Part shown: piece after piece, positions 2,241 to 59,345 of the stretch
How the letters are laid out: each line of letters begins with the position of its first letter
Numbering within the stretch: the stretch's first letter is position 1
NCBI RefSeq assembly: GCF_001194135.2
Contig: NC_068982.1
Span: forward strand, 188,418,611-188,482,610
Origin: Octopus bimaculoides
Taxonomy: Eukaryota
Direction: 5' to 3'
Length of the DNA: 64,000 nucleotides
Program-made: the position numbers and the translations under genes
The notes under the pieces: generated by a model
Seen by the model: only the letters and a program-made list of their open reading frames with translations
Told to the model about the DNA's origin: nothing
Database searches by the model: none

Positions 2241-2705
2241 CTGTTCTGAGCCAGTTAGGAAAGAATCTATGGAAAAGCTGTGATCATAATATCCTTGAAT
2301 TAATTTAGAAAACCACCAGTTTCGGAAGGATTTTATCGGACTCGGCCAGATTATTTCAGGAAAATCCATTAATTTCAAACAGGGTTTATCCGATTTGTCA
2401 TCGTGATATGATCTGTGTAAAAAAGTTCCAAGTCGAGCAGCAGTAGCATATCGCTGCTTGGAGAGAATTAAAGAATGTGTTGAATGAAATGACTTGTGTG
2501 AAGAGTGTCCCTGTAGAGGTCGATGCAAAGCTATCGGGTTTCTTTTAACATTGGCATGCGAAAAGTTTAGAAACCGAATCAGCTTAACCTTGTTGGCATG
2601 AAGATATTTCCTAGAAAGTAAGGACATTGAAAGAATAACGTTAGAAGCGGCGGAAAGACAGTGTCTGTGATAATTAAGGACATATCTCAGCCCTGAAGCT
2701 GCCAT
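2241..2705 (-). CDS. MAIP1: m-AAA protease-interacting protein 1 (C2orf47), coding exon 1 (155 codons); later exons not found in window
   Basis: ORF starts with a basic/hydroxylated mitochondrial-presequence-like region. It ends IIWPSPIKSFRNWWFSKLIQGYYDHSFSIDSFLTGSEQ, resembling human MAIP1 ...SNPINWVRTRIKAFLIWAYFDKEFSITEFSEGAKQ (from memory). Phase-0 donor CAG|GTGTGT at 2241. Lies head-to-head with TYW5 as in human. Confidence 0.85.
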
Positions 2706-2977
2706 GCTTAGGTTTGATGGTGGAACAAGGTCTTACACCGCTTAACGGTTGACTTTTATACAGATACGGTTGTTTAGTTCTCATTCTTTATTCAACAGAA
2801 AATTAAAAGACACCTTTAATTGATATTTATCATCTGAAATAATTTTTGAAATATAAATTACAATTTATAATATTTATTTGCACAATGTGTAAAGATGAAT
2901 GAAACCTCTGTTTCTGGTATAAAATATGAAGAGGGACTATTTAGGCACGACACCCATAGAAATACATTTCTTGTTGG
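2706..2977. promoter_or_regulatory. Putative bidirectional promoter/5' UTRs between MAIP1 and TYW5
   Basis: Only 272 bp separate the two divergent ATGs (2705 on -, 2978 on +). AT-rich and repeat-free. Confidence 0.7.
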
Positions 2978-3091
2978 ATGATGGAATTAATTTCTGGTTG
3001 TGAAAATTGTGATCGGAGGTCAAAGGTCAAACAACTGCAATATATTTCTGGAATTTCTTGCGAAGAATTTAAAAATGTGATATACCCGAAG
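2978..3091 (+). CDS. TYW5: TYW5 exon 1 (MMELISGCENCDRRSKVKQLQYISGISCEEFKNVIYPK)
   Basis: ATG preceded by in-frame TAG at 2957. GISCEEFKNVIYPK matches human GVSREQFMQHLYPQ. Phase-0 donor AAG|GTACC. Confidence 0.85.
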
Positions 3092-3676
3092 GTACCAATA
3101 TACTAAATCTTTATTTTCCTGCTTAACTTCAGTTTCGTAATGTGTGTTCTAAACACATTCCATGGAATAATAAATTTCTCCTCATCGCATTTCCAAATTG
3201 CATTTTCTCCGTTTTGACCGGGTTTTTTCAAATTATTTTACACCAAACACTTCAAAAGAATGTTGGACAGCCCTTTATGAAAAAAACCAAAATATCGACA
3301 CAAGTGTGCCCCCCCCCCCTACGCTCTAATTTGTCTTCACATAACTTCCAGAGAAATGGGTATTTTTAATTAATTTCTTTTTTTTTATAAATACAGATTC
3401 CAATTATATCGGAATTTGTTGTGGAATTTTGTTTTTTTCCGAGGATGGAGAGAATAGTTACAGAAAATTCACACCAGTTGCCTATGTTTCCTCGTACCTT
3501 CCAAAAAAATTGGGTATTTTTAAATGAAATTTTGGCACTATCATGCTATTAGCTGTCAGAAGTGAAAGTGCTCACTGCTAGTGAAGTATCTGTCTGTCTG
3601 TCTGCCTGCCTGTTGCTGGCCTGTCGATTCTTTGGCTACTGACAGCTAATACCATGACTGGCCGGAGCGAGCTATA

Positions 3677-3707
<31 letters not shown>

Positions 3708-3711
3708 ATCT

Positions 3712-4149
3712 NNNNNNNNNNNNNNNNNNNNNNNNNNNNNNNNNNNNNNNNNNNNNNNNNNNNNNNNNNNNNNNNNNNNNNNNNNNNNNNNNNNNNNNNN
3801 NNNNNNNNNNNNNNNNNNNNNNNNNNNNNNNNNNNNNNNNNNNNNNNNNNNNNNNNNNNNNNNNNNNNNNNNNNNNNNNNNNNNNNNNNNNNNNNNNNNN
3901 NNNNNNNNNNNNNNNNNNNNNNNNNNNNNNNNNNNNNNNNNNNNNNNNNNNNNNNNNNNNNNNNNNNNNNNNNNNNNNNNNNNNNNNNNNNNNNNNNNNN
4001 NNNNNNNNNNNNNNNNNNNNNNNNNNNNNNNNNNNNNNNNNNNNNNNNNNNNNNNNNNNNNNNNNNNNNNNNNNNNNNNNNNNNNNNNNNNNNNNNNNNN
4101 NNNNNNNNNNNNNNNNNNNNNNNNNNNNNNNNNNNNNNNNNNNNNNNNN
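3712..4149. other. Assembly gap (N); other gaps at ~8277-8928, 13360-13867, 18072-18340, 19739-20442, 21979-22289, 32508-32613, 41325-41333, 41991-42035, 42583-43204, 56005-56463
   Basis: Runs of N. Confidence 0.99.
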
Positions 4150-5084
4150 CCTGTCGATTCTTTGGCTACTGACAGCTAATAGTTATGAAGAAACAAAGTT
4201 GTGGGGAGGGACACACTTTTGTAGGTAACCCCAGAATTATTTTTAAAGTCTATCATTTTTCGTTCCCTCCTACTCCTACCCGGGGCACCCGAAAGATTTT
4301 CCAGTCGTTTTTACACCGTTGTACTTTAAAACAATGGGCGGTGGGGAAGCTTTTTTTAAAACTAAAATTTGAAATCCATGACCTTATGATTTTGGAATGT
4401 AACTCCTGCTCTGGCGTACGACGGTGATCATCTTTACAATTTTCCCCTCTTTTTTTTTAACACAAAATGAAACTTAAAAATCCATCGTAAGAACCCTGTG
4501 GATGAAGATGGGAATCATAGACTTTTAAAATGTTTTATATATATATAAAGGCCCCATCATCTTGAAGTGCGTGGTGGAAATAAAATATTGATAAACCCCC
4601 ATGAAAACGGAGAAAATCGAACATGTGGGTGAGCTATTCCAAAACTCCGCCGAAGGGTTAAATTATTTAAATATGACAAAATAAATGAGATGTGGTGTCG
4701 TTCATTCCTTTCCGTTCAAGGTATTAAATAAATAAACGAAAGGGACCCTAATTCAAAATAAACCACAAAATTTTTTGCCTGCATTTAATTTGAAACCGGT
4801 TAAATTTATATTGGAGAGGACAATGTTTGAGTAATTCAGTAATTAGATTTCTTGAAAAAATATCTTCTGCAATTATCTTCAGGAGCCCTGAAATATGGTT
4901 TATGGTGAAAAGACTAAAGTTTTACGGTAGGGGCTGATAATTGACTTAGAGAGAGAGAAAAAAAAAAACATTCACATGAGCAAGGGAAATAACTCCGAAC
5001 TAATTATAGCAGTCGCTAGAAACAGCAGTCAGATTTCTTTAATATTTCACCCTACCGTCTTTAATAATCCTTTCTGAAATTTAG

Positions 5085-5235
5085 TGGGAGAGGGCCAGTT
5101 GATTAGATCGACCCCAGTATGCAACTGGTACTTAATTTATTGACCCCGAAAGGATGAAAGGCAAATTCGACCTCGGCGGAATTTGAACTCGGAACGTAGA
5201 CAGACGAAATACCGCTAAGCATTTCGCCCAAACGT
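5085..5235 (-). mobile_element. SINE family E (ggcagaa-cgttagc...gagttcaaattcc head), representative copy
   Basis: Shared core gaccccgaaaggatgaaaggcaaagtcgacctcggcggaatttgaactc. Also at ~7010-7150, 12040-12250, 15430-15650, 15690-15890, 36570-36800, 47730-47945, 48000-48170, 48250-48470. Confidence 0.8.
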
Positions 5236-6410
5236 CTCAAATAATGGAGAGTATGGTTGTTGGTGTATTAAATTGTAGCATGGTCACGTGTAGGATGTCT
5301 TTGATGATAGGTTTGTTCAATCGGAACAGATAATTGGTACTTAACAACTCGAAGAGAATTTCGAGAAATAACGACCAAATCTCGCTCAAATTGCATCGTA
5401 CCAAATTAATAAAGAAGGAGCATCATCATCATCATCATCATCATCATTTGAAGTCGTTTTCCATGCTGGCATGGATCTGATGGTTTGAGAGGAGCTGGTC
5501 TGCCAGAGAGTTGTACTAGGCTCAATTTGTCTTTTTTTGGCATGGTTTCTACAGCCAGATGACCTTCTTAATGCCAGTCACTTTATAGAGTGGACAGGGT
5601 GCCTATTATGTGGCACACGCACCAATGGGGTCACCAAGTAGCTTACAAGAGAAAGACCTCTTAGCTGAAAGATGGCGTGGAAGTGAGGGAAGTAGTTGGG
5701 ATTAGAGTATGATAGAAGGACGGGGAGAGTTGTCGATACTATAGAGATTATGCTTGGCTACTTAAGTAGGAGAGGAAGAGGAGAGAGAATTAGAGAGACA
5801 GTGAGAGAGAGAGAGAAATAGATGGTTGGAGATGTATTAGGGCCTATCTACAGGGAACTGGGTTGTTGGGTGGGGGAGTATAAGTAAGATAGAGAGGGAT
5901 GCTCCATTAGAGTTTGTGGGGACATGTCTAGAAGAGATGGGGAAGACGTAGCTGAAGTGAGTGAGGGTGAGAGAAATTGGAGTGGCTGGGAAGGGGGCGG
6001 TGTGGTTGATATGCTGGAGCTTGGAGAGTATGTGGCTTGGCACGTGAGGGACTTGCCGTGGGATGTGGGAGGATGCTTGGAAGATGGGTTGTAGGGGTGT
6101 TTTGATAGAGGACAGATTATGTGGGAGTGGTGGGGGTGGCATGATTGTAAAGGACAAGTTTGTATGATAACACACAGTCTTTGGTGAGACAGGTGTAAAC
6201 TGTTATTGGCAGACTTCCAGAATAACTACCGTTACCTGACAGAGAAGGAAAGGGGCAAGGAATTGGGTCCTTGTTTGTTTCTGTGAAAGTAGTTGTTGTC
6301 AGGTAACTCAGTACGAGCCATTGACCTATCATGAAATCATTTTAAAAATCACAGAAAAGAGAAATTGAACCTAGTGCAACTCTCTGGTTGACCAGCTCCT
6401 CTCAAACCAC

Positions 6411-6564
6411 CTTGTGATGCTCCTTTGACCAGTTCTGAGAATGGTAAAGTAATAAAGGAAAACCAACAAGAAGAAATCATCATCATCATCATCACCATTT
6501 CCATGCTGGCATGGGTTGGACAATTTGACAGGAGCTGGCAAGGCTGGAGAGCTGCGCCAGGCTC
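6411..6564 (-). pseudogene. Inverted partial duplicate of TYW5 intron 2 end + first ~40 nt of exon 3
   Basis: Reverse complement matches 8929-9083 (TLPFSELVKGASQ visible in ORF track 6349..6693 -). The acceptor is altered. Confidence 0.9.
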
Positions 6565-7927
6565 CAATTGTCTGTTCTGGCATGGTTTTCTACAACTGGA
6601 TGTCCTTCCTAATGCCAACCACTTTACAAAGTGGACTCGGTGTATTTCATGTGACACCAAGTTTATTTCCCAGTTGTGATGGGTCAGCCACAAATTGCTG
6701 TTAATTTCTTGTAGATCCTAGTTGTATGTCTCTCCTGAGGTGTAACTGTCCCTGTGGAAAACGTCAAATGATGGTGATGTCGTTCCTTCACTATTAATTT
6801 GGTAGGATGCAATTTGAGTGAGATTTGGTTGTTATTTCTCGAAGTTCAAGCGACCGTGTAGGAGTTCTCTTGGAGTTGTTGTTAAGTACCAACTTCTACC
6901 TCACCTCATGATTATGACATGTATTGAAATATAATTAATTTGTTTCAATTAATCTTTTAAATGATGACAAATTTAGTAAAATAACTTTGTCATTATTATG
7001 CTGGTACATGGCAGTAAACTGACAGAATCATCATCATGCCAGACAAAATACTTAGTGGCATTTCATCTGTCTTTACATTCTGAGTTCAAATTCCACCAAG
7101 GTTGACTTGACCTTTCATCTTTCTCAGGTCAATAAAACAAATACCAGTTGTACATTATTTATATTTGAGAGATATTTGTCTTCATCTTGTTTGTTGTTAA
7201 CACAACGTTTCAGCTGATATACCCTCCAGCCTTCATCAGGTGTCTTGGAGAAATTTCGAACCTGGGTTCTCATTCCTAAGGTATTTTTTGATATTATTAT
7301 TATTATTCAGATCACTGCTTGGAATCGAACTCAGAATCTTAGGGTTAGTAGCCCATGGGCACTGAGGGTGATGTAATTGATTTACGCCTTCCCTGAAATT
7401 GCTGGCCTTGCACCAAAATTTAAAACTATTATTAAGCTAGTGTTTGGATCATAAACGAACACGAAATTTTGATGGTAAATTTTAAATAAAATCACTTTAA
7501 AACAGGAAGTTTGTATCCTAAAACAGTTGAGGTGGTGACAGGGCCAGATTTATGTAAGGCCCATGGCCCCCAACAGGCCCTAGGTGCTGGGAGGGCCCCT
7601 TTAACTCAGAGAGCCCTAAAAGCTTGGAGTTAAAAATTAAAAGAAATTATTTTAGGCTTCCACACAGTTTCTGTTCACCAAATTCATTTAAAGATCTGAT
7701 CATCTCAGGTCTATAGTAGAAGACACTTTATCCAAGTGACTGTGACGTGGGACTGAACCTGAAACCTCATTCATATCCCCAAACTTCTGAACCAGTCATG
7801 CCTCTGCCTTAAGCCATACCAATGCCATCTAGGAACTGAACTTTCATCAGGAACTTTCCCCTTTGTTCTTTCACAAACGCACTGTTTATATGAAATGTTC
7901 ACCCACCATTCTCTTCTTTAACAACAG

Positions 7928-8082
7928 CGAGTTCCAGTTGTGCTTAGAGGATTCGACCTTGGATCCTGTACGAGTAAATGGACCGTAGAGTATTTGATAT
8001 CACAGGCTGGAGGCCAAAATGTTACCACTCATGTCTCAGAAAACCCACAGATGGATTTTCTAAGTAAAAATTTTCTCTATCG
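7928..8082 (+). CDS. TYW5: TYW5 exon 2 (RVPVVLRGFDLGSCTSKWTVEYLISQAGGQNVTTHVSENPQMDFLSKNFLYR)
   Basis: ACAG| acceptor, CG|GTAAG donor, 155 nt. Strong match to human [23 protein letters not shown]...QMDFISKNFVYR. Confidence 0.95.
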
Positions 8083-9042
8083 GTAAGTTTTCACTTTCAT
8101 CATCATCATCATCATCATCATCATTTATTTTTTTAAGTCCACTTTTCCATCATCATCATCATCATCATCGTTTAACGTCCATTTTCCATGCTGGCATGGG
8201 TTGGGCGGTTTGACTGAGGTCTGGAGAGCCAGCAGCTGCACCAGGCTCCAATCTGATCTGTCAATGTTTCTACAGTNNNNNNNNNNNNNNNNNNNNNNNN
8301 NNNNNNNNNNNNNNNNNNNNNNNNNNNNNNNNNNNNNNNNNNNNNNNNNNNNNNNNNNNNNNNNNNNNNNNNNNNNNNNNNNNNNNNNNNNNNNNNNNNN
8401 NNNNNNNNNNNNNNNNNNNNNNNNNNNNNNNNNNNNNNNNNNNNNNNNNNNNNNNNNNNNNNNNNNNNNNNNNNNNNNNNNNNNNNNNNNNNNNNNNNNN
8501 NNNNNNNNNNNNNNNNNNNNNNNNNNNNNNNNNNNNNNNNNNNNNNNNNNNNNNNNNNNNNNNNNNNNNNNNNNNNNNNNNNNNNNNNNNNNNNNNNNNN
8601 NNNNNNNNNNNNNNNNNNNNNNNNNNNNNNNNNNNNNNNNNNNNNNNNNNNNNNNNNNNNNNNNNNNNNNNNNNNNNNNNNNNNNNNNNNNNNNNNNNNN
8701 NNNNNNNNNNNNNNNNNNNNNNNNNNNNNNNNNNNNNNNNNNNNNNNNNNNNNNNNNNNNNNNNNNNNNNNNNNNNNNNNNNNNNNNNNNNNNNNNNNNN
8801 NNNNNNNNNNNNNNNNNNNNNNNNNNNNNNNNNNNNNNNNNNNNNNNNNNNNNNNNNNNNNNNNNNNNNNNNNNNNNNNNNNNNNNNNNNNNNNNNNNNN
8901 NNNNNNNNNNNNNNNNNNNNNNNNNNNNGAGCCTGGCGCAGCTCTCCAGCCTTGCCAGCTCCTGTCAAATTGTCCAACCCATGCCAGCATGGAAATGGTG
9001 ATGATGATGATGATGATTTCTTCTTGTTGGTTTTCCTTGTAG

Positions 9043-9112
9043 GATTTTACCATTCTCAGAACTGGTCAAACGAGCATCACAAGATTCTAATGAAGAATTT
9101 TTCATTTGTCCG
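9043..9112 (+). CDS. TYW5: TYW5 exon 3 (ILPFSELVKRASQDSNEEFFICP)
   Basis: Pyrimidine tract + TGTAG| acceptor, CCG|GTCAG donor, 70 nt, phase compatible with exon 2. Matches human TLPFDQLVQRAAEEKHKEFFVSE. Confidence 0.92.
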
Positions 9113-9755
9113 GTCAGTTCATTTCTTTGATAATTTTCCTTCAAATTCTTTGTTTTTGCTTTTTTATTGCATTCCTTTTATTTTTTGCTTGTTTCAGTCA
9201 TTAGGCTGTGGCCATGCTGGGGCACCACCTACAAGAATGCTAGTCAAACGAATTGACCACACTACCATTTGTTTCAGCCTAGTACTTATTGTATCAATAT
9301 CTTTTGCTGAAATGCTAAGTTACAGGAATGTAAACAAACCAACATCAGTTCTGAAGTGATGGTGGGAGACAAACAGATGCAGAGACACACATGCACATTT
9401 ATATATACATACACTCACAACGGGCTTCCTTCAGTTTCCTTCTACCAAATCTACTCGCAAGGCTTTGGTCATCCCAAGGCTATTGCAGAACACACTTGCC
9501 CAAGGTGCCACAAAGTGGGACTGAACCCAGAACCATATGGTTGGAAAGCAAGCTGCTTACCCAACAGCCATGCCTCCACCTTTGTAAAGATTTTTTTTCT
9601 TAAATGGACTGAAACATTAAACATAACTTTTTTCAAAAAAAAGAAGAGATACATTTAAATACTTTTACTTGTGTCAGTCATTAGACAACAGCCATGCTGG
9701 AGCACCACCTTGAAAGGTTTATGTTTATTTATTTATCTAATTATTTATTCTTTAG

Positions 9756-9938
9756 GAGGAGAAATACTATCTGCGTTCCTTGGGAGGTGACCCACGAAAT
9801 ACAGTTGCAAACATCGAAGAACAGTTTCCACAAATAGCAAATGATTTGAACATTCCAGATCTTTTTCCTGCCAAATCCTTCTTCTCCAGTGTCTTTCGTA
9901 TTGCTTCAAAATCAACCCAACTCTGGACCCACTATGAT
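9756..9938 (+). CDS. TYW5: TYW5 exon 4 ([61 protein letters not shown])
   Basis: TTTAG| acceptor, GAT|GTAAGT donor, 183 nt. Contains [18 protein letters not shown] and the JmjC HxD motif LWTHYD. Confidence 0.97.
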
Positions 9939-10815
9939 GTAAGTAAGACCAGACCCTAACAACTCTGTAAGTAAGAGGTAACCATTCATTAGAATTCTTT
10001 TTTACCATCTAGGTGTCACAGAGGCAAAGTTTCCTTTCGAGTGTTGGGCCTCACAGAGGCAAAGTGGCTGAGTTCCTTTCAGATATTTTTGCCTCAGGAT
10101 TTTGGGCCATAGGAAAGTTTGCTGTATTGGAAATTTTTCTGCAAGACAATTTCACCAAAAAATATGAATTCCTCCCTTGGTATATAATTGTTTCAACCAA
10201 CATATATTATATTATTATAGCAAAGCTACAGGAGTAGGGGTCAGCAAAATGAAGCAATCTAAAACAGGATTATGTTTTCAAAAAAAAAAAATTAAATTTC
10301 TGCTTAAATAAAAAGTAATGCAAAATAAATATGATAACGTTTACAAAGAACAAAAAGAAAACAAAAAAACAATTAAATCTAAAACAGAATTATAAAAAGC
10401 ATATATATATATAAAAACTAATTTTTTTCAGAGCTGTAATTTCTCTAAATCAGGTTGCCTGCCATTATCTTCAAAATTTCCTATACGGCAAAGTTTCCTA
10501 CTCTCGGAGTGGTTGGCATGAGGAAGGGTATCCAGGTGTAGAAACTTTGCCAGATCAGATTGGAGCCTGGTGCAGCCGCTGGCTCTCCAGACCTCAGTCA
10601 AACTGTTCAACCCATGCTAGCATGGAAAGCAGACGTTAAACGATAATGATGATGATGGTATATAGAAATACACACACGCACATTCATACATACATGTGTG
10701 CATGGATGTATCTGTTTTTGCTGGTCCCAGCCATTAAACTGGAGAGCCATGATGCAGCACTGCCTTAATATACTTGAATTTATATACCTTTTTTTTTTTT
10801 AATTTTTTTAATTAG

Positions 10816-10903
10816 ATCATGGATAATATACTGATGCAAATCAAAGGCCGTAAACGAGTTGTGCTGTTTAGCCCCCAGGATGCTCACTACCTTTATCTCC
10901 AAG
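10816..10903 (+). CDS. TYW5: TYW5 exon 5 ([30 protein letters not shown])
   Basis: ATTAG| acceptor, AAG|GTACGT donor, 88 nt. Matches human [30 protein letters not shown]. Confidence 0.96.
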
Positions 10904-10979
10904 GTACGTAGTTTCTATCAGCGTTTACTTTACTTAAACAATGAATGGAAGTTTTTTCTTTTTGATTTGATTATTTTAT

Positions 10980-11460
10980 CTCATCATCATCATCATCATC
11001 ATCGTTTAATGTCTGCTTTCCATGCTAGCATGAGTTGGACGATTTGACTGAGGACTGGCAAACCAGCAGGCTACACCAGGCTCCAATCCAATCTGGCAAG
11101 GTTTCTACAGCTGGATGCCCTTCCTAACACCAACCACTTCGAGAGTGTAGTGGGTGCTTTTACGTGCCTCCGGCACGAGGGCCAGTCACACAGTACTGGC
11201 AATGGCCATGCTCAAAATGGTGTTTTTTAAGTGCCACCTGCACAGGAGCCAATCCAGTGGCACTGGCAACGACCTCGCTTGAATGTTTTCTAACATGCCA
11301 CTGGCACAAGTGCCAGTAAGGCGACGCTGGTAACGATAACACTCAAATGGTGCTATATACGTGCCACTGGCACAGAAACCAGACAGCTGCTCTGGCAATG
11401 ACCACACTCAGATGGTGCTGTTAGCACACCACTGGCACAGGTGCCAGTCATCGAATATGG
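10980..11460 (+). mobile_element. Repeat family B: (CAT)n-tttaacgtcc...catgctagcatgggttggac retroelement end with internal tandem ~55-70-bp subunits; representative copy
   Basis: Recurrent RTE-like 3' end with (GAT)n tail. Other copies at ~5420-5640, 6475-6660, 8150-8276, 10490-10655, 13990-14220, 15975-16270, 21660-21978, 30620-30780, 32350-32730, 37200-37645, 44155-44640, 48490-48890, 50720-51110, 61220-61480, 62425-62780. Confidence 0.85.
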
Positions 11461-11559
11461 TTCAATTATGATTTCGATTTCACTTGCATTATATGAATAT
11501 TGAGTTCTCACACCAGGCTATTAGAATCACTGAGCCTAAGCGAAATAATAATAATTATT

Positions 11560-12989: not shown

Positions 12990-14851
12990 ATAACAAAAAT
13001 ATTTTTAATAATCGATGAGAATCGCGCAAAACAGCAGGAATCCAAACGATAATGTATTTATTCATTCTTAATTCTTTCTGGCAGGTTCGAACGTGAATCG
13101 CTGTTTGTTCGTCATTGGAAAACGTTTTCGTTCTTGAGACGATTTATATTTTCTCAACACACAGGATTCACCTGAATATTAAGAGGTTGTAGCATTAAGA
13201 AGCTCACTTTGCAACTGCTTGGCTTCGAGTTCAGTCCTAGCGCATGGTACCCTGGCCCTGGGCCATCAAAAACCTCCTAAATCGGATTAGTAGCTAGAAA
13301 ATGAAAGAGGCCCATTGTATTTATATATATGTGTGTATATCTGTGGTTTCCTTCTCTACNNNNNNNNNNNNNNNNNNNNNNNNNNNNNNNNNNNNNNNNN
13401 NNNNNNNNNNNNNNNNNNNNNNNNNNNNNNNNNNNNNNNNNNNNNNNNNNNNNNNNNNNNNNNNNNNNNNNNNNNNNNNNNNNNNNNNNNNNNNNNNNNN
13501 NNNNNNNNNNNNNNNNNNNNNNNNNNNNNNNNNNNNNNNNNNNNNNNNNNNNNNNNNNNNNNNNNNNNNNNNNNNNNNNNNNNNNNNNNNNNNNNNNNNN
13601 NNNNNNNNNNNNNNNNNNNNNNNNNNNNNNNNNNNNNNNNNNNNNNNNNNNNNNNNNNNNNNNNNNNNNNNNNNNNNNNNNNNNNNNNNNNNNNNNNNNN
13701 NNNNNNNNNNNNNNNNNNNNNNNNNNNNNNNNNNNNNNNNNNNNNNNNNNNNNNNNNNNNNNNNNNNNNNNNNNNNNNNNNNNNNNNNNNNNNNNNNNNN
13801 NNNNNNNNNNNNNNNNNNNNNNNNNNNNNNNNNNNNNNNNNNNNNNNNNNNNNNNNNNNNNNNNNNNGATGCTTTGTGCAGCTCCCTGGCTGGTCAGCTC
13901 CTATCAAACTGTCCACTCCATGCCAGAATAGAAAACGGACATTAAAAGATGGTGATGATGATGCTCTGCAGCTGTTTCCACAGTTCAAGAACAATCAGCA
14001 TCATCATCATCATCAATTAACATCCATTGTCCATGCTGGCATGGGTTGGACGGTTTGACCAGGGCTGGCAAGCTAGAAGGCTGCACCAGACTCCAATCTG
14101 ATTTGGCATGGTTTCTACAGCTGGATGCTCTTCCTAACACCAACCACTCCAAGAGTGTAATGGGTGCTTATATGTGCCACCAGCACAGGTGCCATTTGCC
14201 TGACACCAATATCTGCCACAACTGCAATGTTATTTGGCTTTATGTGTCTTCTCAAGCACGACATAGTGCCAAAGGTCTTGGTCATTGCCTCCATGTGGCG
14301 AATCATTCTGTGATTAATTTGAATAAGATGACTAAACCATTTCATCAGAAACTAACACTGAAATATTTCAATTTAGTTCTTGATGAAATACTTTATTTAT
14401 CTCATTTGAGTTAGGGTCATGACCCTCTTTGGTCATGAAGGACCATGGGATTGCACCTAGAAAGTTACCCTCCGAGGCACAAGTCTGGGCAAGGTTGTTT
14501 ATGCAAGACCAGCAGTCGCCCATGCATACCAGCCTCCTCTCTCCACACCACAAATGTTATCCAAGGCAAAGGCAAAGGGGCCGATACAGCTTGGCACCTG
14601 TAACGTCGCAACTCATTTCTACAGCTGAGTGAAGTGGAACAATGTGAAATAAAGTGTCTTGCTTGAGAACACAACACACAACTCAGTCCAGGAATCGAAC
14701 TCACTACCTCATGATTGTGAGCCCAATGCTGTAACCACTGAGCCATGGTACCTTCACTCATTCATGTTAATTTATTTTGTATCAAGCTTCATCATCATCA
14801 TCATTTAACATCTGCATTCCATGCTGGCATGGGTTAGACAGTTTGACTGCT

Positions 14852-17172: not shown

Positions 17173-18383
17173 ATTCATTTGACTAAAATCCTTCAAGGAA
17201 GTGCTCCAGCATGGCCATGGTCTGATGACTGAAACAAACAAAAGATATTCTGTGCCCTAAGGACAAAGAATATAAAATTTCCCTTGGCAGTATTTGAACT
17301 TAGAGACTACAGAGAGGAAACTAAACGCATTTAATTTGATAATCTGTATCAGCAGCCTCTACTGCTGTCAGAAACACACACACACACACACACACACATG
17401 TGCGTGTACATACACACAAATGCAGAAAGGCTATTTACATAATTATTATTGACCAAGTGACCTGATCTGCTTTTAATTTCCTTGGCCTAGTAAATTATTA
17501 AGAATGTAGGAAAGAGAATAATAGCATGTTGGATCAGCTTACCTCTCTATACAGGTATATCTACGTAATCTATCCATCCATATGGCTTCTCAACCCACCT
17601 CTCTCTCTCTCTCACTCTGTCTCTCTTTCTCTCTCTCTCTCACACACGCACTTTCTCTCTCTATATGTGTGTGTTTGTTGGCATGGTTACAAACACAGGT
17701 ATGGTTGTGTGGTAAGTAGCTTGCTTCCCAATCGTATGGTTCCAGGTTCTCATCCCACTGTGTGGCACCTTGGTCAAGTGTCTTCTACTATAGTCTCGGG
17801 CCAGCTAAAGCCTTATGAGTGGATTTAGTAGACAGAAACTGAAAGAAGCCCGTCATATATATATGTGCGTTTGTGTGTGTGTGTATGTGTTCCCTCCACT
17901 GCTTGTCAGCCAGTGATGGTGTTTTTACATCCCCATGACTTAGCAGTTTGGCAAAACAGACTGACAGAATATGTACCAGGCTTTAAAAAAGTGTCGGGGT
18001 CGATTTGCTCAACTAAAAATTCTTCAAGGCAGTACCCCAGCATGACCACAGACTAATGGCTCAAAACAAATNNNNNNNNNNNNNNNNNNNNNNNNNNNNN
18101 NNNNNNNNNNNNNNNNNNNNNNNNNNNNNNNNNNNNNNNNNNNNNNNNNNNNNNNNNNNNNNNNNNNNNNNNNNNNNNNNNNNNNNNNNNNNNNNNNNNN
18201 NNNNNNNNNNNNNNNNNNNNNNNNNNNNNNNNNNNNNNNNNNNNNNNNNNNNNNNNNNNNNNNNNNNNNNNNNNNNNNNNNNNNNNNNNNNNNNNNNNNN
18301 NNNNNNNNNNNNNNNNNNNNNNNNNNNNNNNNNNNNNNNNCAAACGTTTTAATGCCCTCTATTGCGATTTTGTTCCATTTTTA

Positions 18384-19450: not shown

Positions 19451-20594
19451 TCTGCCACACACAATGACTACCTTCTCTATTAGTCATCAAGGGTTCCAGT
19501 TGATCCGATCAATGGAACAGCCTGCTCATGAAATTAACATGCAAGTGGCTGAGCACTCCACAGACATGTGTACCCTTAACGTAGTTCTCGGGGATATTCA
19601 ACGTGACACAGAGTGTGACAAGGCTGGCCCCTTTGAATTACAGGTACAACAGAAACAGGAAGTAAGAGTGAGAGAAAGTTGTGGTGAAAGAGTACAGCAG
19701 GGTTCGTGGAACTTTGGAGCTTTGGGTGTTTTCGTTCANNNNNNNNNNNNNNNNNNNNNNNNNNNNNNNNNNNNNNNNNNNNNNNNNNNNNNNNNNNNNN
19801 NNNNNNNNNNNNNNNNNNNNNNNNNNNNNNNNNNNNNNNNNNNNNNNNNNNNNNNNNNNNNNNNNNNNNNNNNNNNNNNNNNNNNNNNNNNNNNNNNNNN
19901 NNNNNNNNNNNNNNNNNNNNNNNNNNNNNNNNNNNNNNNNNNNNNNNNNNNNNNNNNNNNNNNNNNNNNNNNNNNNNNNNNNNNNNNNNNNNNNNNNNNN
20001 NNNNNNNNNNNNNNNNNNNNNNNNNNNNNNNNNNNNNNNNNNNNNNNNNNNNNNNNNNNNNNNNNNNNNNNNNNNNNNNNNNNNNNNNNNNNNNNNNNNN
20101 NNNNNNNNNNNNNNNNNNNNNNNNNNNNNNNNNNNNNNNNNNNNNNNNNNNNNNNNNNNNNNNNNNNNNNNNNNNNNNNNNNNNNNNNNNNNNNNNNNNN
20201 NNNNNNNNNNNNNNNNNNNNNNNNNNNNNNNNNNNNNNNNNNNNNNNNNNNNNNNNNNNNNNNNNNNNNNNNNNNNNNNNNNNNNNNNNNNNNNNNNNNN
20301 NNNNNNNNNNNNNNNNNNNNNNNNNNNNNNNNNNNNNNNNNNNNNNNNNNNNNNNNNNNNNNNNNNNNNNNNNNNNNNNNNNNNNNNNNNNNNNNNNNNN
20401 NNNNNNNNNNNNNNNNNNNNNNNNNNNNNNNNNNNNNNNNNNATATATATGTGTATATATATACATATACATATATATATATATATCATCATCATCATCA
20501 TCATCATTGTTTAACGTCCGCTTTCCATGCTAGCATGGGTTGGACGATTTGACTGAGGACTGGTGGACCAGGAGGCGACACCAGGCTCCAATCT

Positions 20595-21609: not shown

Positions 21610-22289
21610 TATATATATATGTGTATATATATATATACACACACACATACAAGCATAAATCATCATCATTTAACATCTGTTTTGCATGATGGCATGGGTT
21701 GGAGTGTTTGACAGGAGCTGGTAGTGCCAGAGGCTGTACCAGGCTCCAATTCTCTGTTTTGGCTTGGTTTCTACAGTTGGATATTCTTCCTAATACCAAC
21801 CACTTCACAGAGTGTACTGAGTGACTTTTACATGGCACCAGTACAGGTATATATATATATATATATATTCGAGCGAGATCGTTGCCAGTGCCCCTGGACT
21901 GGCTTGTGCGGGTGGCACATAAAAGACACCATTTCGAGCGTGGCCGTTTTCGTGCGGGTGACACGTAAAAGCACCCACNNNNNNNNNNNNNNNNNNNNNN
22001 NNNNNNNNNNNNNNNNNNNNNNNNNNNNNNNNNNNNNNNNNNNNNNNNNNNNNNNNNNNNNNNNNNNNNNNNNNNNNNNNNNNNNNNNNNNNNNNNNNNN
22101 NNNNNNNNNNNNNNNNNNNNNNNNNNNNNNNNNNNNNNNNNNNNNNNNNNNNNNNNNNNNNNNNNNNNNNNNNNNNNNNNNNNNNNNNNNNNNNNNNNNN
22201 NNNNNNNNNNNNNNNNNNNNNNNNNNNNNNNNNNNNNNNNNNNNNNNNNNNNNNNNNNNNNNNNNNNNNNNNNNNNNNNNNNNNNNNNN

Positions 22290-58340: not shown

Positions 58341-59345
58341 TACAGGATGTGATGGGTAAATTGTCGCCATTTTATATTTTTAATTTCGTGCATATGTATT
58401 GTTTGTTTTTGCTCTTGTCAACTACACAGTATAGTAGGGTCAGTTGGTCACTGTCTGTGAGAAAAACAGCACCATGATGCAATTCACTCTGCCAGATATT
58501 TGGAAACAACATACTGTACTGCTTGGAATTCATGTCAGAAGCTCCAACATGAACATTTCAAAGTGTTTGGCTGTCAATCTGAGGACAGTGCAATCTGAGG
58601 ACAGTGCAATCTGAGGACAGTGCAATCTGAGGACAGTGCAACCTGAGGACAGTGCAACCTGAGGACAGTGCAATCTGAGGACAGTGCAATCTGAGGACAG
58701 TGCAATCTGAGGACAGTGCAATCTGAGGACAGTGCAATCTGAGGACATGTACTGAGACTGATAAAATCAGACATCCAGTCAACATCATGGTGTTTGGAGT
58801 GATCACTGGTGATGGCGACGTTATGCCTCCATTCATCTTCCAACATGGCCTCAGAATGGAGGCCTACATCAAGTGCCTGGAGGTAGTGCTGCCTTGGATC
58901 AAAAGGATGGCTGCTGGAAGACCCTATGTCTGGCAACAGGACTCTGCACCAGGCCACAGAAGCAGGAGAACCCAGTCATGGCTGTCAGACAATGTCTGTG
59001 ACCATGTCACCCCTAACATCTGGCCACATAACTCCCCAGACTGCAACCCCCTTTGTCATTATGCATGGGGCACAGTTGAATGAGGGACCAACAAAACACC
59101 TTGTAACACCAAAGATGAACTGAAGGCAAGGATTATGGCAGCATTCACCAACTTAAACAAGGAGATTCCAAAGTTGCCTGGAGGCCGTCGTTGAGGCCAA
59201 TGGCGATTTTATTGAATAAATTTACTCTTTAGTATTTCAGGATGTTTTTATGTAATTTTGGTAAATATATCTTAAAATTCGACGTCAGTGTTATTTTCAT
59301 TTTTGCATAATTTAGACGACGGTTTATTCACTGCACCAAATGTAC
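58341..59345 (+). mobile_element. Decayed Tc1/mariner-superfamily transposon, maT (DD37D)-type
   Basis: HPVNIMVFGVITGDGDVMPPFIF...YVWQQDSAPGH...IWPHNSPDCNPL(C)HYAWG...NTKDELKARIMAAF. 37 residues lie between the QQD Asp and the third catalytic position (now Cys). Internal deletion and degenerate TIRs. Confidence 0.85.
58574..58747 (+). repeat. 16-bp minisatellite (ctgaggacagtgcaat) x ~11
   Basis: gaggacag recurs every 16 nt from 58581 to 58741; two units carry aac instead of aat. Confidence 0.95.

What the first reader, a model, noticed from the sequence alone, without database searches (positions are those of the whole stretch)
6411..9083. Inverted copy of the TYW5 exon-3 splice-acceptor region in intron 1, mismatched exactly at the AG
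Seen: 6411-6564 is the reverse complement of 8929-9083. By my reading it is identical for ~110 nt, including SINE sequence, a (GAT)6 tract and the whole polypyrimidine tract. It then differs in a cluster (gtaggatttt -> tattacttt) covering the acceptor AG and first exon bases, and matches ~40 nt of exon 3 with one substitution. Inference: in the pre-mRNA the two could pair into a ~150-bp duplex looping out exon 2 and masking the polypyrimidine tract, with an internal loop over the AG. This could act as a splicing modulator or an editing-complementary sequence for ADAR recoding of exon 3, which is relevant in coleoids with extensive A-to-I editing. An antisense copy needs no acceptor inactivation, so the position of the mismatches is curious, though it may be chance.
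Basis: partly seen in the sequence, partly recalled or inferred. Interest (0 to 1): 0.75.

Follow-up and report, generated by a model that had tools for sequence, protein, structure and literature searches.

The report
Young inverted copy of splice acceptor
A recent inverted duplication of about 0.36 kb put an antisense copy of the TYW5 exon-3 splice acceptor and its upstream SINE into intron 1, where it should pair with the original as a ~150-bp RNA duplex; it is most likely a neutral by-product of DNA replication or repair, and it needs read-level confirmation because one arm touches an assembly gap.

Summary
6411-6564 is the reverse complement of 8929-9083: 110 nt are exact, and the other 45 nt carry 4 substitutions and 1 indel. 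It is the highest-identity interspersed repeat in the window. The gene model (TYW5 exons 1-3) is also right.

New here: the intron-1 arm is the start of a ~358-nt block (6410-6767) that interrupts an older SINE fragment. A paralogue of that fragment (reverse complement of 5334-5535) serves as an "empty site". The block has no target-site duplication and no tail, and it lies 2.4 kb from its source. All five differences lie within 45 nt of its left junction. This fits a local, error-prone, DNA-level inverted templated insertion. On that reading the position of the mismatches at the AG is incidental.

The predicted duplex is -297 kcal/mol and persists in a 3.3-kb fold. It buries the whole polypyrimidine tract. 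Only G9039, G9042, G9043 and C9071 are unpaired, and the A of the AG stays paired.

The splicing and editing roles are plausible but untested. No orthologue, read or RNA-seq data could be reached. The exon-3 arm starts at the first base after the gap, so an assembly artefact remains possible (~20%). Interest is modest.

The parts
2978..3091 (+). TYW5 exon 1 (ATG ... YPK, donor gtacc)
   Evidence: It joins exon 2 in frame, giving YPK|RVPVVLRG, which matches amphioxus IYPKRVPAVLRG.
5334..5535 (-). Older paralogue (SINE 3' half plus ~100 nt of unique flank), used as the 'empty site' reference
   Evidence: 88-91% identical to 6355-6409 plus 6768-6892 in inverted orientation. The flank is not repeated elsewhere in the window.
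6355..6409 (+). Left half of the older 5'-truncated SINE copy that the young block interrupts
   Evidence: 91% identical to the reverse complement of 5481-5535.
6410..6767 (-). Young inserted block of ~358 nt. The right boundary lies somewhere between ~6730 and 6767.
   Evidence: the older element's collinearity with its paralogue is broken between 6409 and 6768. No direct repeat of 6 nt or more flanks the block, and there is no tail at 6411.
6411..6564 (-). Arm 1: inverted copy of the exon-3 acceptor region. It comprises pseudo-exon 6411-6451, the antisense of the polyY tract 6455-6475, (ATC)6 6476-6493, and the SINE body.
   Evidence: tblastn detects the pseudo-exon ITLPFSELVKGASQ at 6462-6412 on the minus strand.
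6449..6454 (.). Mismatch cluster in arm 1 (G6449, A6451, A6452, and a 1-nt deletion after 6454). A separate single mismatch lies at C6423.
   Evidence: The Arg codon cga at 9071-9073 is conserved in orthologues, so the intron-1 copy is the derived one.
6476..6700 (-). SINE carried by the young block (sense on the minus strand, tail at 6476-6493). The position of its head is approximate.
6768..6892 (+). Right half of the older interrupted element (SINE tail plus unique flank)
   Evidence: 87.5% identical to the reverse complement of 5356-5435, continuing to 5334.
7927..8082 (+). TYW5 exon 2 (156 nt, in frame), enclosed by the two arms
8152..8276 (-). SINE copy at the left edge of the gap, in the opposite orientation to the SINE in arm 2. 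It is the closest competing pairing partner.
   Evidence: I4; -130 kcal/mol with arm 2.
8277..8928 (.). Assembly gap inside intron 2. It should hold the source of 6565-6767 if the block is a faithful copy.
   Evidence: 6660-6767 has no other match in the window.
8929..9083 (+). Arm 2 (the source): SINE 3' part, (GAT)6 9000-9017, polyY tract 9018-9038, AG 9041-9042, and the first 41 nt of exon 3
9043..9112 (+). TYW5 exon 3 (70 nt; skipping it would shift the frame)

Best explanation
This is a young, local, DNA-level inverted duplication.

Origin:
- A segment of at least 155 nt, probably ~330-360 nt, was copied in reverse orientation. It ran from inside intron 2, through a sense-oriented SINE and its (GAT)n tail and the exon-3 polypyrimidine tract and AG, to 41 nt into TYW5 exon 3.
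- The copy was inserted 2.4 kb upstream, into an older SINE fragment in intron 1.
- The most likely route is a replicative template switch or break-repair synthesis (FoSTeS/MMBIR-type templated insertion) in a region already rich in inverted repeats.
- Its few differences from the source were probably introduced by low-fidelity synthesis just after the switch. That would explain why they sit at the junction-proximal end and, incidentally, over the AG.

Shown: the nesting, the boundaries, the identities, and the predicted duplex.

Inferred consequence: in the pre-mRNA the two arms pair into a near-perfect duplex of 150 bp or more. The duplex encloses exon 2 and buries the exon-3 polypyrimidine tract. 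In a tissue with high ADAR activity it would be promiscuously A-to-I edited. It could lower use of the exon-3 acceptor, or favour exon-2 back-splicing or exon-3 skipping.

I judge the element a neutral or slightly deleterious newcomer, not an evolved regulator.
For: - The arms match at 96.8% over 155 nt with 110 nt exact. Family copies are 72-80% alike, and every other repeat pair is 92.7% or lower.
- The shared sequence continues 65 nt past the SINE tail into unique intron and exon sequence, so the arms are not two independent SINE insertions.
- 6410-6767 interrupts an older element. The two halves of that element (6355-6409 and 6768-6892) are collinear with the reverse complement of 5334-5535.
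- The intron-1 copy is the derived one. It has lost the AG and changed a conserved Arg codon.
- The copy contains unspliced intron plus exon. It has no target-site duplication of 6 nt or more and no tail at the 6411 end, and its left junction is blunt with one filler base.
- The source lies only 2.4 kb away. A second, older inverted 'SINE plus flank' duplication lies within 1 kb, which points to a local DNA mechanism.
- All five differences lie within 45 nt of the junction. P is ~0.002 if they are five independent events and ~0.08 if they are two events.
- BIR/MMBIR is reported to be error-prone, and inverted repeats are described as crucibles of rearrangement (PMC4352052).
- Duplex: -296.6 kcal/mol, z = -38. 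Arm 2 pairs with arm 1 at 151 of 155 positions in a 3.35-kb global fold.
- No other contig end in the window carries a near-exact duplicate.
- The diverged part of the copy lies about 1.8 kb or more from any gap, inside a contig.
Against: - The exon-3 arm starts at the first base after a gap, so the exact 110 nt could owe something to assembly or gap filling.
- The source of 6565-6767 is unseen. The right junction therefore cannot be placed to the base, and microhomology there cannot be scored.
- Treated as two events, the clustering of differences near the junction is only marginally significant (P ~0.08).
- No reads, no second assembly and no sister species were available. Neither the reality nor the age of the insertion is independently confirmed.
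- Neutrality is assumed from youth and anatomy. It was not measured.
Confidence: 0.55

Rival explanations
1. Assembly artefact. The perfect 110 nt at the contig end, or the placement of the block in intron 1, might come from a mis-extension at the gap edge or a mis-fill. It might also come from a structural variant on one haplotype that was threaded into the consensus. In that case the genome would not carry both arms in cis as written.
For: - Arm 2 begins exactly at the gap edge.
- The window has 11 gaps, and contigs commonly end in repeats.
- The identity pattern is step-like: 0 differences in 110 nt, then 5 in 45 nt.
Against: - The diverged part of the copy (6411-6454) and both junctions lie inside a contig, about 1.8 kb or more from any gap. 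That part differs from the source by a complex cluster, so a second distinct sequence must exist in the reads.
- The sequences around the left junction share no long k-mer that could cause a false join.
- None of the other 21 contig ends has a duplicate at 95% or above elsewhere in the window.
- An exact repeat longer than a read is itself a sufficient cause for the gap.
Confidence: 0.2
2. Retrotransposition with 3' transduction. A read-through transcript of the SINE next to exon 3 carried 65 nt of downstream flank, was reverse-transcribed, and was inserted into intron 1.
For: - The SINE's sense orientation puts the (GAT)n tail directly upstream of the shared flank. The copy therefore has the layout 'SINE plus 3' flank'.
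- The older neighbouring duplicate has the same layout and is 5'-truncated.
Against: - No target-site duplication of 6 nt or more, and no A-rich or simple-repeat tail at the 6411 end.
- The transduced stretch runs through two T4 runs (9031-9034 and 9045-9048). From general knowledge, these should stop Pol III.
- By my rough estimate, a daughter landing 2.4 kb from its parent in a gigabase-scale genome has a chance of about 1e-6. It would have had to happen twice at this spot.
Confidence: 0.1
3. Selected cis-regulatory RNA element. The inverted copy is maintained because the duplex serves one of three roles: an editing-complementary sequence for exon 3, a mask of the exon-3 acceptor, or a promoter of exon-2 circularisation. 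On this reading the loop at the AG is tuned by selection.
For: - The duplex is strongly predicted and survives competition from other SINEs.
- Inverted repeats of 30-40 nt in flanking introns suffice for circularisation (PMC4201285). Reverse-complementary matches promote back-splicing and exon skipping (PMC8330042 title and abstract).
- Long, nearly perfect dsRNA from neighbouring inverted repeats is the main hyper-editing substrate, and such dsRNA is unusually frequent in octopus (PMC5625713).
- 14 adenosines of exon 3 lie in the duplex, and editing 5 of them would recode the protein.
- A 7-nt cluster hitting the AG by chance has P ~0.05.
Against: - The element is extremely young (110 nt exact), so there is no time-tested conservation.
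- The mismatches leave the polypyrimidine tract (21 of 21 nt) and the A of the AG paired. They would not rescue acceptor recognition.
- A perfect long helix gives non-selective editing, unlike known ECS structures.
- TYW5 does not appear in the one coleoid recoding supplement that could be searched (a weak negative).
- The position of the mismatches is explained by their closeness to the insertion junction.
Confidence: 0.05

Closest known systems
Intronic inverted-repeat dsRNA (the inverted-Alu type) as an ADAR hyper-editing substrate
   Same: Two oppositely oriented copies of a SINE lie in one pre-mRNA, a few kb apart, and are predicted to form a long near-perfect duplex. This is described as the dominant editing substrate across Metazoa and as especially frequent in octopus (PMC5625713; operational criterion in PMC9989829).
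   Different: The arms are not independent SINE insertions. They are a segmental copy that also carries unique sequence: a polypyrimidine tract, a 3' splice site and 41 nt of coding exon. Identity is ~97-100%, against ~75% for ordinary pairs of this family in the window.
Complementary flanking-intron repeats that drive exon circularisation and exon skipping
   Same: Reverse-complementary matches sit in the introns on both sides of exon 2. They are far longer than the 30-40 nt shown to be sufficient (PMC4201285; PMC8330042).
   Different: The downstream arm runs across the next exon's acceptor and into that exon. The arms lie 1.36 kb and ~0.85 kb from the exon-2 splice sites. No back-splice evidence is available.
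Editing-complementary sequence (ECS) of site-selectively edited exons, for example the GluA2 Q/R site (from memory)
   Same: An intronic sequence is complementary to coding-exon sequence and so places exon adenosines in dsRNA.
   Different: Known ECS helices are short, imperfect and conserved, and they usually lie in the adjacent intron. This helix is long, nearly perfect and very young, and it lies one intron upstream. No editing is documented.
Templated inverted insertions and local inverted duplications by template switching (FoSTeS, MMBIR, break-repair synthesis)
   Same: An inverted copy of a nearby template is inserted at a break in a recognisable pre-existing sequence. There is no target-site duplication, the junction is blunt with 1 nt of filler, the mutations lie next to the junction, and the region is rich in inverted repeats (PMC4352052; PMC7954356 and PMC11724301).
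   Different: The size (~0.36 kb copied from 2.4 kb away) falls between the short-range events (tens of bp) and the kb-to-Mb rearrangements mostly described. One junction is hidden in the gap, so microhomology cannot be scored.
3' transduction by retrotransposons (L1 and SVA; from memory)
   Same: The layout is 'element plus downstream flank'.
   Different: There is no target-site duplication and no tail, the insertion is local, and the transduced stretch crosses Pol III terminator-like T runs.

Membership tests
Templated inverted insertion (replicative template switch or break-repair synthesis) | The inserted DNA is a copy of a nearby template in inverted orientation | tested here: met
   6411-6564 is the reverse complement of 8929-9083, 2.4 kb away.
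Templated inverted insertion (replicative template switch or break-repair synthesis) | The insertion interrupts an otherwise collinear pre-existing sequence (an empty site can be recognised) | tested here: met
   6355-6409 and 6768-6892 are collinear with the reverse complement of 5334-5535. 6410-6767 is the extra sequence.
Templated inverted insertion (replicative template switch or break-repair synthesis) | Junctions show microhomology, are blunt, or carry short filler, with no target-site duplication | tested here: inconclusive
   The left junction is blunt with 1 nt of filler (C6410), and there is no direct repeat of 6 nt or more. The right junction cannot be placed because its source lies in the gap.
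Templated inverted insertion (replicative template switch or break-repair synthesis) | Point mutations are concentrated near the junction | tested here: met
   All five differences lie within 45 nt of 6410 and none in the next 110 nt. P is 0.002 (five events) to 0.08 (two events).
Retrotransposed SINE with 3' transduction | Target-site duplication flanking the insert | tested here: not met
   By reading the flanks 6385-6410 and 6700-6780, I found no shared direct repeat of 6 nt or more.
Retrotransposed SINE with 3' transduction | A-rich or simple-repeat tail at the 3' end of the transduced segment | tested here: not met
   On the minus strand the copy ends ...CATCACAAG and is followed directly by old SINE sequence.
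Editing-complementary sequence (ECS) | Base-pairing between an intronic element and the edited exon | tested here: met
   Exon positions 9044-9083 pair with 6411-6450, except C9071.
Editing-complementary sequence (ECS) | Documented A-to-I editing of the exon | not testable with these tools
   No RNA-seq was available. TYW5 is absent from the one searchable coleoid recoding supplement.
Editing-complementary sequence (ECS) | Conservation of the element and of its pairing across species | not testable with these tools
   No cephalopod orthologue or locus could be retrieved. The near-identity of the arms argues that the element is very young.
circRNA-promoting flanking inverted repeats | A reverse-complementary match of at least ~30-40 nt in both introns that flank the circularised exon | tested here: met
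   Arm 1 lies in intron 1 and arm 2 in intron 2, around exon 2. The threshold is from PMC4201285.
circRNA-promoting flanking inverted repeats | Back-splice junction reads (8082 joined to 7927) | not testable with these tools
   No transcriptome data were available.
Assembly artefact | The same signature (a near-exact duplicate at a contig end) recurs at other gaps | tested here: not met
   None of the other 21 contig ends has a match at 95% or above elsewhere in the window.
Assembly artefact | The junctions are not supported by independent reads or assemblies | not testable with these tools
   Exact-ORF look-ups and a metagenome scan found nothing.

The most novel reading that the evidence does not exclude
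A newborn cis-acting dsRNA switch. A single local inverted duplication created, in one step, a helix of 150 bp or more. The helix sequesters the exon-3 polypyrimidine tract of TYW5, encloses exon 2, and places 14 exon adenosines (5 of them recoding) in an ADAR substrate. The small loop at the AG would be retained by selection. On this reading the locus shows how an editing-complementary or splice-masking element is born, and it would let TYW5 output be tuned by ADAR activity or by temperature.
Probability: 0.05. Interest if true: 0.6.

Novelty: new member of a known kind. Interest (0 to 1): 0.3.

Why it matters
If real, this is a clean natural example of how one replication or repair accident can wrap a splice acceptor and coding sequence into a long intramolecular dsRNA. 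Such dsRNA is the raw material from which editing-complementary sequences, splice-masking helices and circRNA-promoting repeats could later evolve.

The example is datable, because it is nested inside an older element that has an empty-site paralogue. It also makes concrete, cheap predictions:
- A-to-G clusters in both arms.
- Specific recoding positions in exon 3.
- An 8082>7927 back-splice junction.
- Frameshifting skipping of exon 3.

It is a single young locus with no evidence of selection, in a genome type already reported to be rich in such duplexes. It is therefore an instructive case, not a new principle.

Tried and rejected
- **Orthologous or independent loci.** The protein search returned TYW5 from many animals, but nothing above 62% identity over the full query and no cephalopod. 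Four exact-ORF look-ups, which spanned the left junction, each arm and exon 2, were all 'not on record'. A metagenome scan for a 24-mer of exon 3 gave 0 hits. A full-length TYW5 could not be rebuilt, because exons after 10908 are not detectable in the window.
- **Editing data.** No paper links TYW5 with octopus editing. TYW5 and 'wybutosine' are absent from the supplements of PMC8382921.
- **Secondary short-range template switch as the source of the mismatch cluster.** No direct or inverted match of 7 nt or more that covers the cluster exists within 5900-7000. Rejected for lack of support.
- **Target-site duplication.** I first considered 'TTGTGATG' (6412-6419 and 6676-6683). I dropped it because the second copy lies inside the 5' region of the SINE.
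- **Two independent SINE insertions.** Rejected, because identity continues 65 nt beyond the tail into unique sequence, and ordinary family copies are ~75% alike.
- **Known RNA families and tRNA-like genes.** Rfam at E <= 0.1 and ARAGORN found nothing in 2500-11500.
- **A-to-I editing as the source of the differences** (that is, an RNA-derived copy). Rejected, because none of the differences is an A-to-G change.
Full report
**1. Observation**

The claimed inverted repeat is real.
- The repeat finder reports 6455-6564 and 8929-9038 as 110 nt, 100% complementary. It reports a second segment, 6411-6462 against 9032-9083, at 87%.
- A gapped alignment joins them into one 154/155-nt match with four substitutions and one indel. 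BLAST gives 96.8% identity over 155 columns, E = 1e-69.
- In source orientation the cluster is CCTTGTAGGATTTTACC against CCTT-TATTACTTTACC. The isolated change is C9071 against the complement of C6423.
- The pair table places the differences at G6449 (opposite U9045), A6451 and A6452 (opposite G9043 and G9042), a missing base opposite G9039, and C6423 opposite C9071.

**2. Gene context and the gap**

- The protein encoded by exons 2-5 is TYW5. The best named hits are 'tRNA wybutosine-synthesizing protein 5', with Pfam PF13621.
- tblastn with real orthologues places exon 2 at 7927-8082, exon 3 at 9043-9112, exon 4 at about 9756-9941 and exon 5 at about 10816-10905.
- Exon 1 is 2978-3091. It ends ...IYPK|gtacc and joins exon 2 in frame.
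- Arm 1 therefore lies in intron 1.
- The gap 8277-8928 lies inside intron 2. Exons 2 and 3 are adjacent in every orthologue alignment with no residues missing (YR|ILPF), and the phase (CG|G) fits. The order and orientation of the two contigs are supported.
- The gap's length is only an estimate, and so is the 2364-nt spacing of the arms.
- The match starts at the first base after the gap, so its true length is unknown.

**3. More than chance, and not a routine artefact**

- Most of each arm belongs to a SINE family with about 20 copies in the window. Those copies are 72-80% identical to one another.
- In the sense orientation the SINE ends ...CCAACCCATGCCAGCATGGAAA...(GAT)n.
- The two arms are 100% identical across the SINE part. 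They share a private 12-nt deletion before the tail, and they go on matching for 65 nt of non-SINE sequence.
- A self-comparison of the window shows no other interspersed pair above 92.7%. None of the other 21 contig ends has a near-exact duplicate elsewhere.

**4. What it is: a nested insertion**

- Immediately left of arm 1, 6355-6409 is a fragment of another SINE copy in the opposite orientation. It is 91% identical to the reverse complement of 5481-5535.
- That paralogue's tail and ~100 nt of unique flank (5435-5334) reappear at 6768-6892 at 87.5%. The flank occurs nowhere else in the window.
- So 6355-6409 and 6768-6892 are one older element, and 6410-6767 (~358 nt) is extra sequence inserted into it.
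- The inserted block reads, on the minus strand: about 70-100 nt of unknown sequence, then the SINE body, the tail, the polypyrimidine tract, the mutated AG, and 41 nt of exon 3.
- The intron-1 copy is the derived one. It has lost the AG and changed an Arg codon that is conserved in orthologues.
- If the source of 6565-6767 exists, it must lie in the gap. At 203 nt it fits within the 652-nt estimate.

**5. How it arose**

- The copy contains unspliced intron plus exon. It has no A-rich or simple-repeat tail at its 6411 end and no flanking direct repeat of 6 nt or more. Its left junction is blunt with one filler base.
- Its source is 2.4 kb away. A second, older inverted duplication with the same 'SINE plus flank' layout lies within 1 kb. 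By my rough estimate, a retrotransposed daughter landing this close to its parent in a gigabase-scale genome has a chance of about 1e-6, and it would have had to happen twice.
- I therefore favour a local DNA-level event: a replicative template switch or break-repair synthesis that copied the opposite strand nearby.
- The literature describes inverted repeats as crucibles of such rearrangements, and describes BIR/MMBIR as error-prone with reduced processivity (PMC4352052, which cites Carvalho et al. 2013).
- That fits the one odd feature. All five differences lie within 45 nt of the left junction, and none lie in the following 110 nt. P is 0.002 if they are five independent events and 0.08 if the cluster counts as one event.
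- The AG lies 41-42 nt from the junction, so its being hit follows from position. The chance that a 7-nt cluster placed at random overlaps the AG is about 0.05.
- A later short-range template switch as the source of the cluster was tested and found no template.

**6. What it should do in RNA (inferred)**

- The isolated arms give -296.6 kcal/mol. As a hairpin they give -297.4 kcal/mol, z = -38 against shuffles.
- Competing SINE partners in the same pre-mRNA reach only -53 to -130 kcal/mol.
- I folded 5300-9300 with the gap letters removed. Arm 2 still pairs with arm 1 at 151 of 155 positions. The older inverted pair forms a helix that abuts it, with only nucleotide 6410 between the two helices.
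- Unpaired bases are G9039, G9042, G9043 and C9071. The A of the AG and all 21 nt of the polypyrimidine tract are paired.
- The mismatches would therefore not keep the acceptor accessible. From general knowledge, U2AF binding requires a single-stranded tract.
- Expected consequences follow from published work. Long, nearly perfect dsRNA from neighbouring inverted repeats is the main hyper-editing substrate, and octopus is reported as unusually rich in such loci (PMC5625713). Inverted repeats of 30-40 nt in flanking introns suffice for exon circularisation (PMC4201285), and such matches also promote exon skipping (PMC8330042).
- At this locus, exon 2 (156 nt) is the enclosed exon. Exon 3 (70 nt) would shift the frame if skipped.
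- Fourteen adenosines of exon 3 lie in the helix. Editing would recode at 9044 (I>V), 9060 (E>G), 9068 (K>E), 9069 (K>R) and 9081 (Q>R).
- None of this could be tested.

**7. Comparison with known systems and novelty**

- By architecture this is an inverted-repeat dsRNA locus of the common kind. It also meets the structural criterion for circRNA-promoting flanking repeats.
- It resembles an ECS only in that an intronic element pairs with an exon. It lacks the short, imperfect, conserved helix of known ECSs, and no editing is documented.
- By origin it fits templated inverted insertion better than 3' transduction. Two defining features of 3' transduction, the target-site duplication and the tail, were tested and not met.
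- What is unusual is the cargo: a functional 3' splice site and coding sequence.
- I class it as a new member of a known kind.

**8. Caveats**

- The organism could not be verified. No near-identical or cephalopod protein was returned. From memory, the SINE families look like those of Octopus genomes, but that was not tested.
- The coleoid-specific relevance of ADAR depends on that identification.
- An assembly artefact or a haplotype-specific variant remains possible (about 0.2). The argument against it is that the diverged part of the copy and both junctions sit well inside a contig.

**9. Verdict**

The most likely reading is a young, local, probably neutral inverted duplication whose mismatch position is a by-product of how it was made. 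Interest is 0.3.

Noticed in passing
window 5334-5535 (-) and 6355-6409 plus 6768-6892 (+): There is an older local inverted duplication (88-91% identity) with the same layout as the young one: the 3' half of a SINE plus ~100 nt of unique downstream flank, with about 0.8 kb between the arms. The young block is inserted into one arm of it. This suggests a recurrent local mechanism at this spot.
   Followed up: partly
window 8152-8276 and 8929-9017 (the two edges of gap 8277-8928): The gap is bracketed by SINE copies in opposite orientation (32 nt at 91% complementary; -130 kcal/mol predicted). This inverted pair, together with the exact repeat shared with intron 1, is a likely reason the assembler broke here.
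   Followed up: partly
window 5481-5535/6355-6409 and 6411-6564/8929-9083: In the global fold the older helix and the young helix abut, with only nucleotide 6410 unpaired between them. They could stack into one long composite dsRNA.
   Followed up: no
window 10908-64000: No TYW5 exon downstream of exon 5 was detectable with four orthologue probes. The C-terminal half of the JmjC/cupin domain, for example the FIPALWFHN region, is missing. Those exons may lie in the gaps (13360-13867, 18072-18340, 19739-20442, 21979-22289 and others) or beyond the window.
   Followed up: partly
window ~7040-7160 and 7290-7340: A second, different SINE-like family (...GAGTTCAAATTCCACCAAGGTTGACTT...GGTCAATAAA...ACCAGTTG) occurs with a partial inverted copy nearby (22-nt arms at 7077-7098 and 7316-7337, 77% complementary). 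ARAGORN and Rfam do not call it tRNA-like.
   Followed up: no
window 58575-58747: A tandem duplication with a 64-nt period (109 nt at 96%, 45 nt exact). Apart from the finding, it is the only repeat above 95% identity in the window.
   Followed up: no
window 6443-6450 (+): On the pre-mRNA strand, arm 1 carries a 5'-splice-site-like ATG|GTAAAG. The reverse complement of the unmutated source would read ATG|GTAAAA. It was not scored or tested as a cryptic donor.
   Followed up: no
whole window / protein database: The protein collection returned no cephalopod TYW5 and nothing above 62% identity over the full query. Exact-ORF look-ups also failed. The source genome and its close relatives appear to be absent from the searchable collections, so the organism is unverified.
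   Followed up: partly
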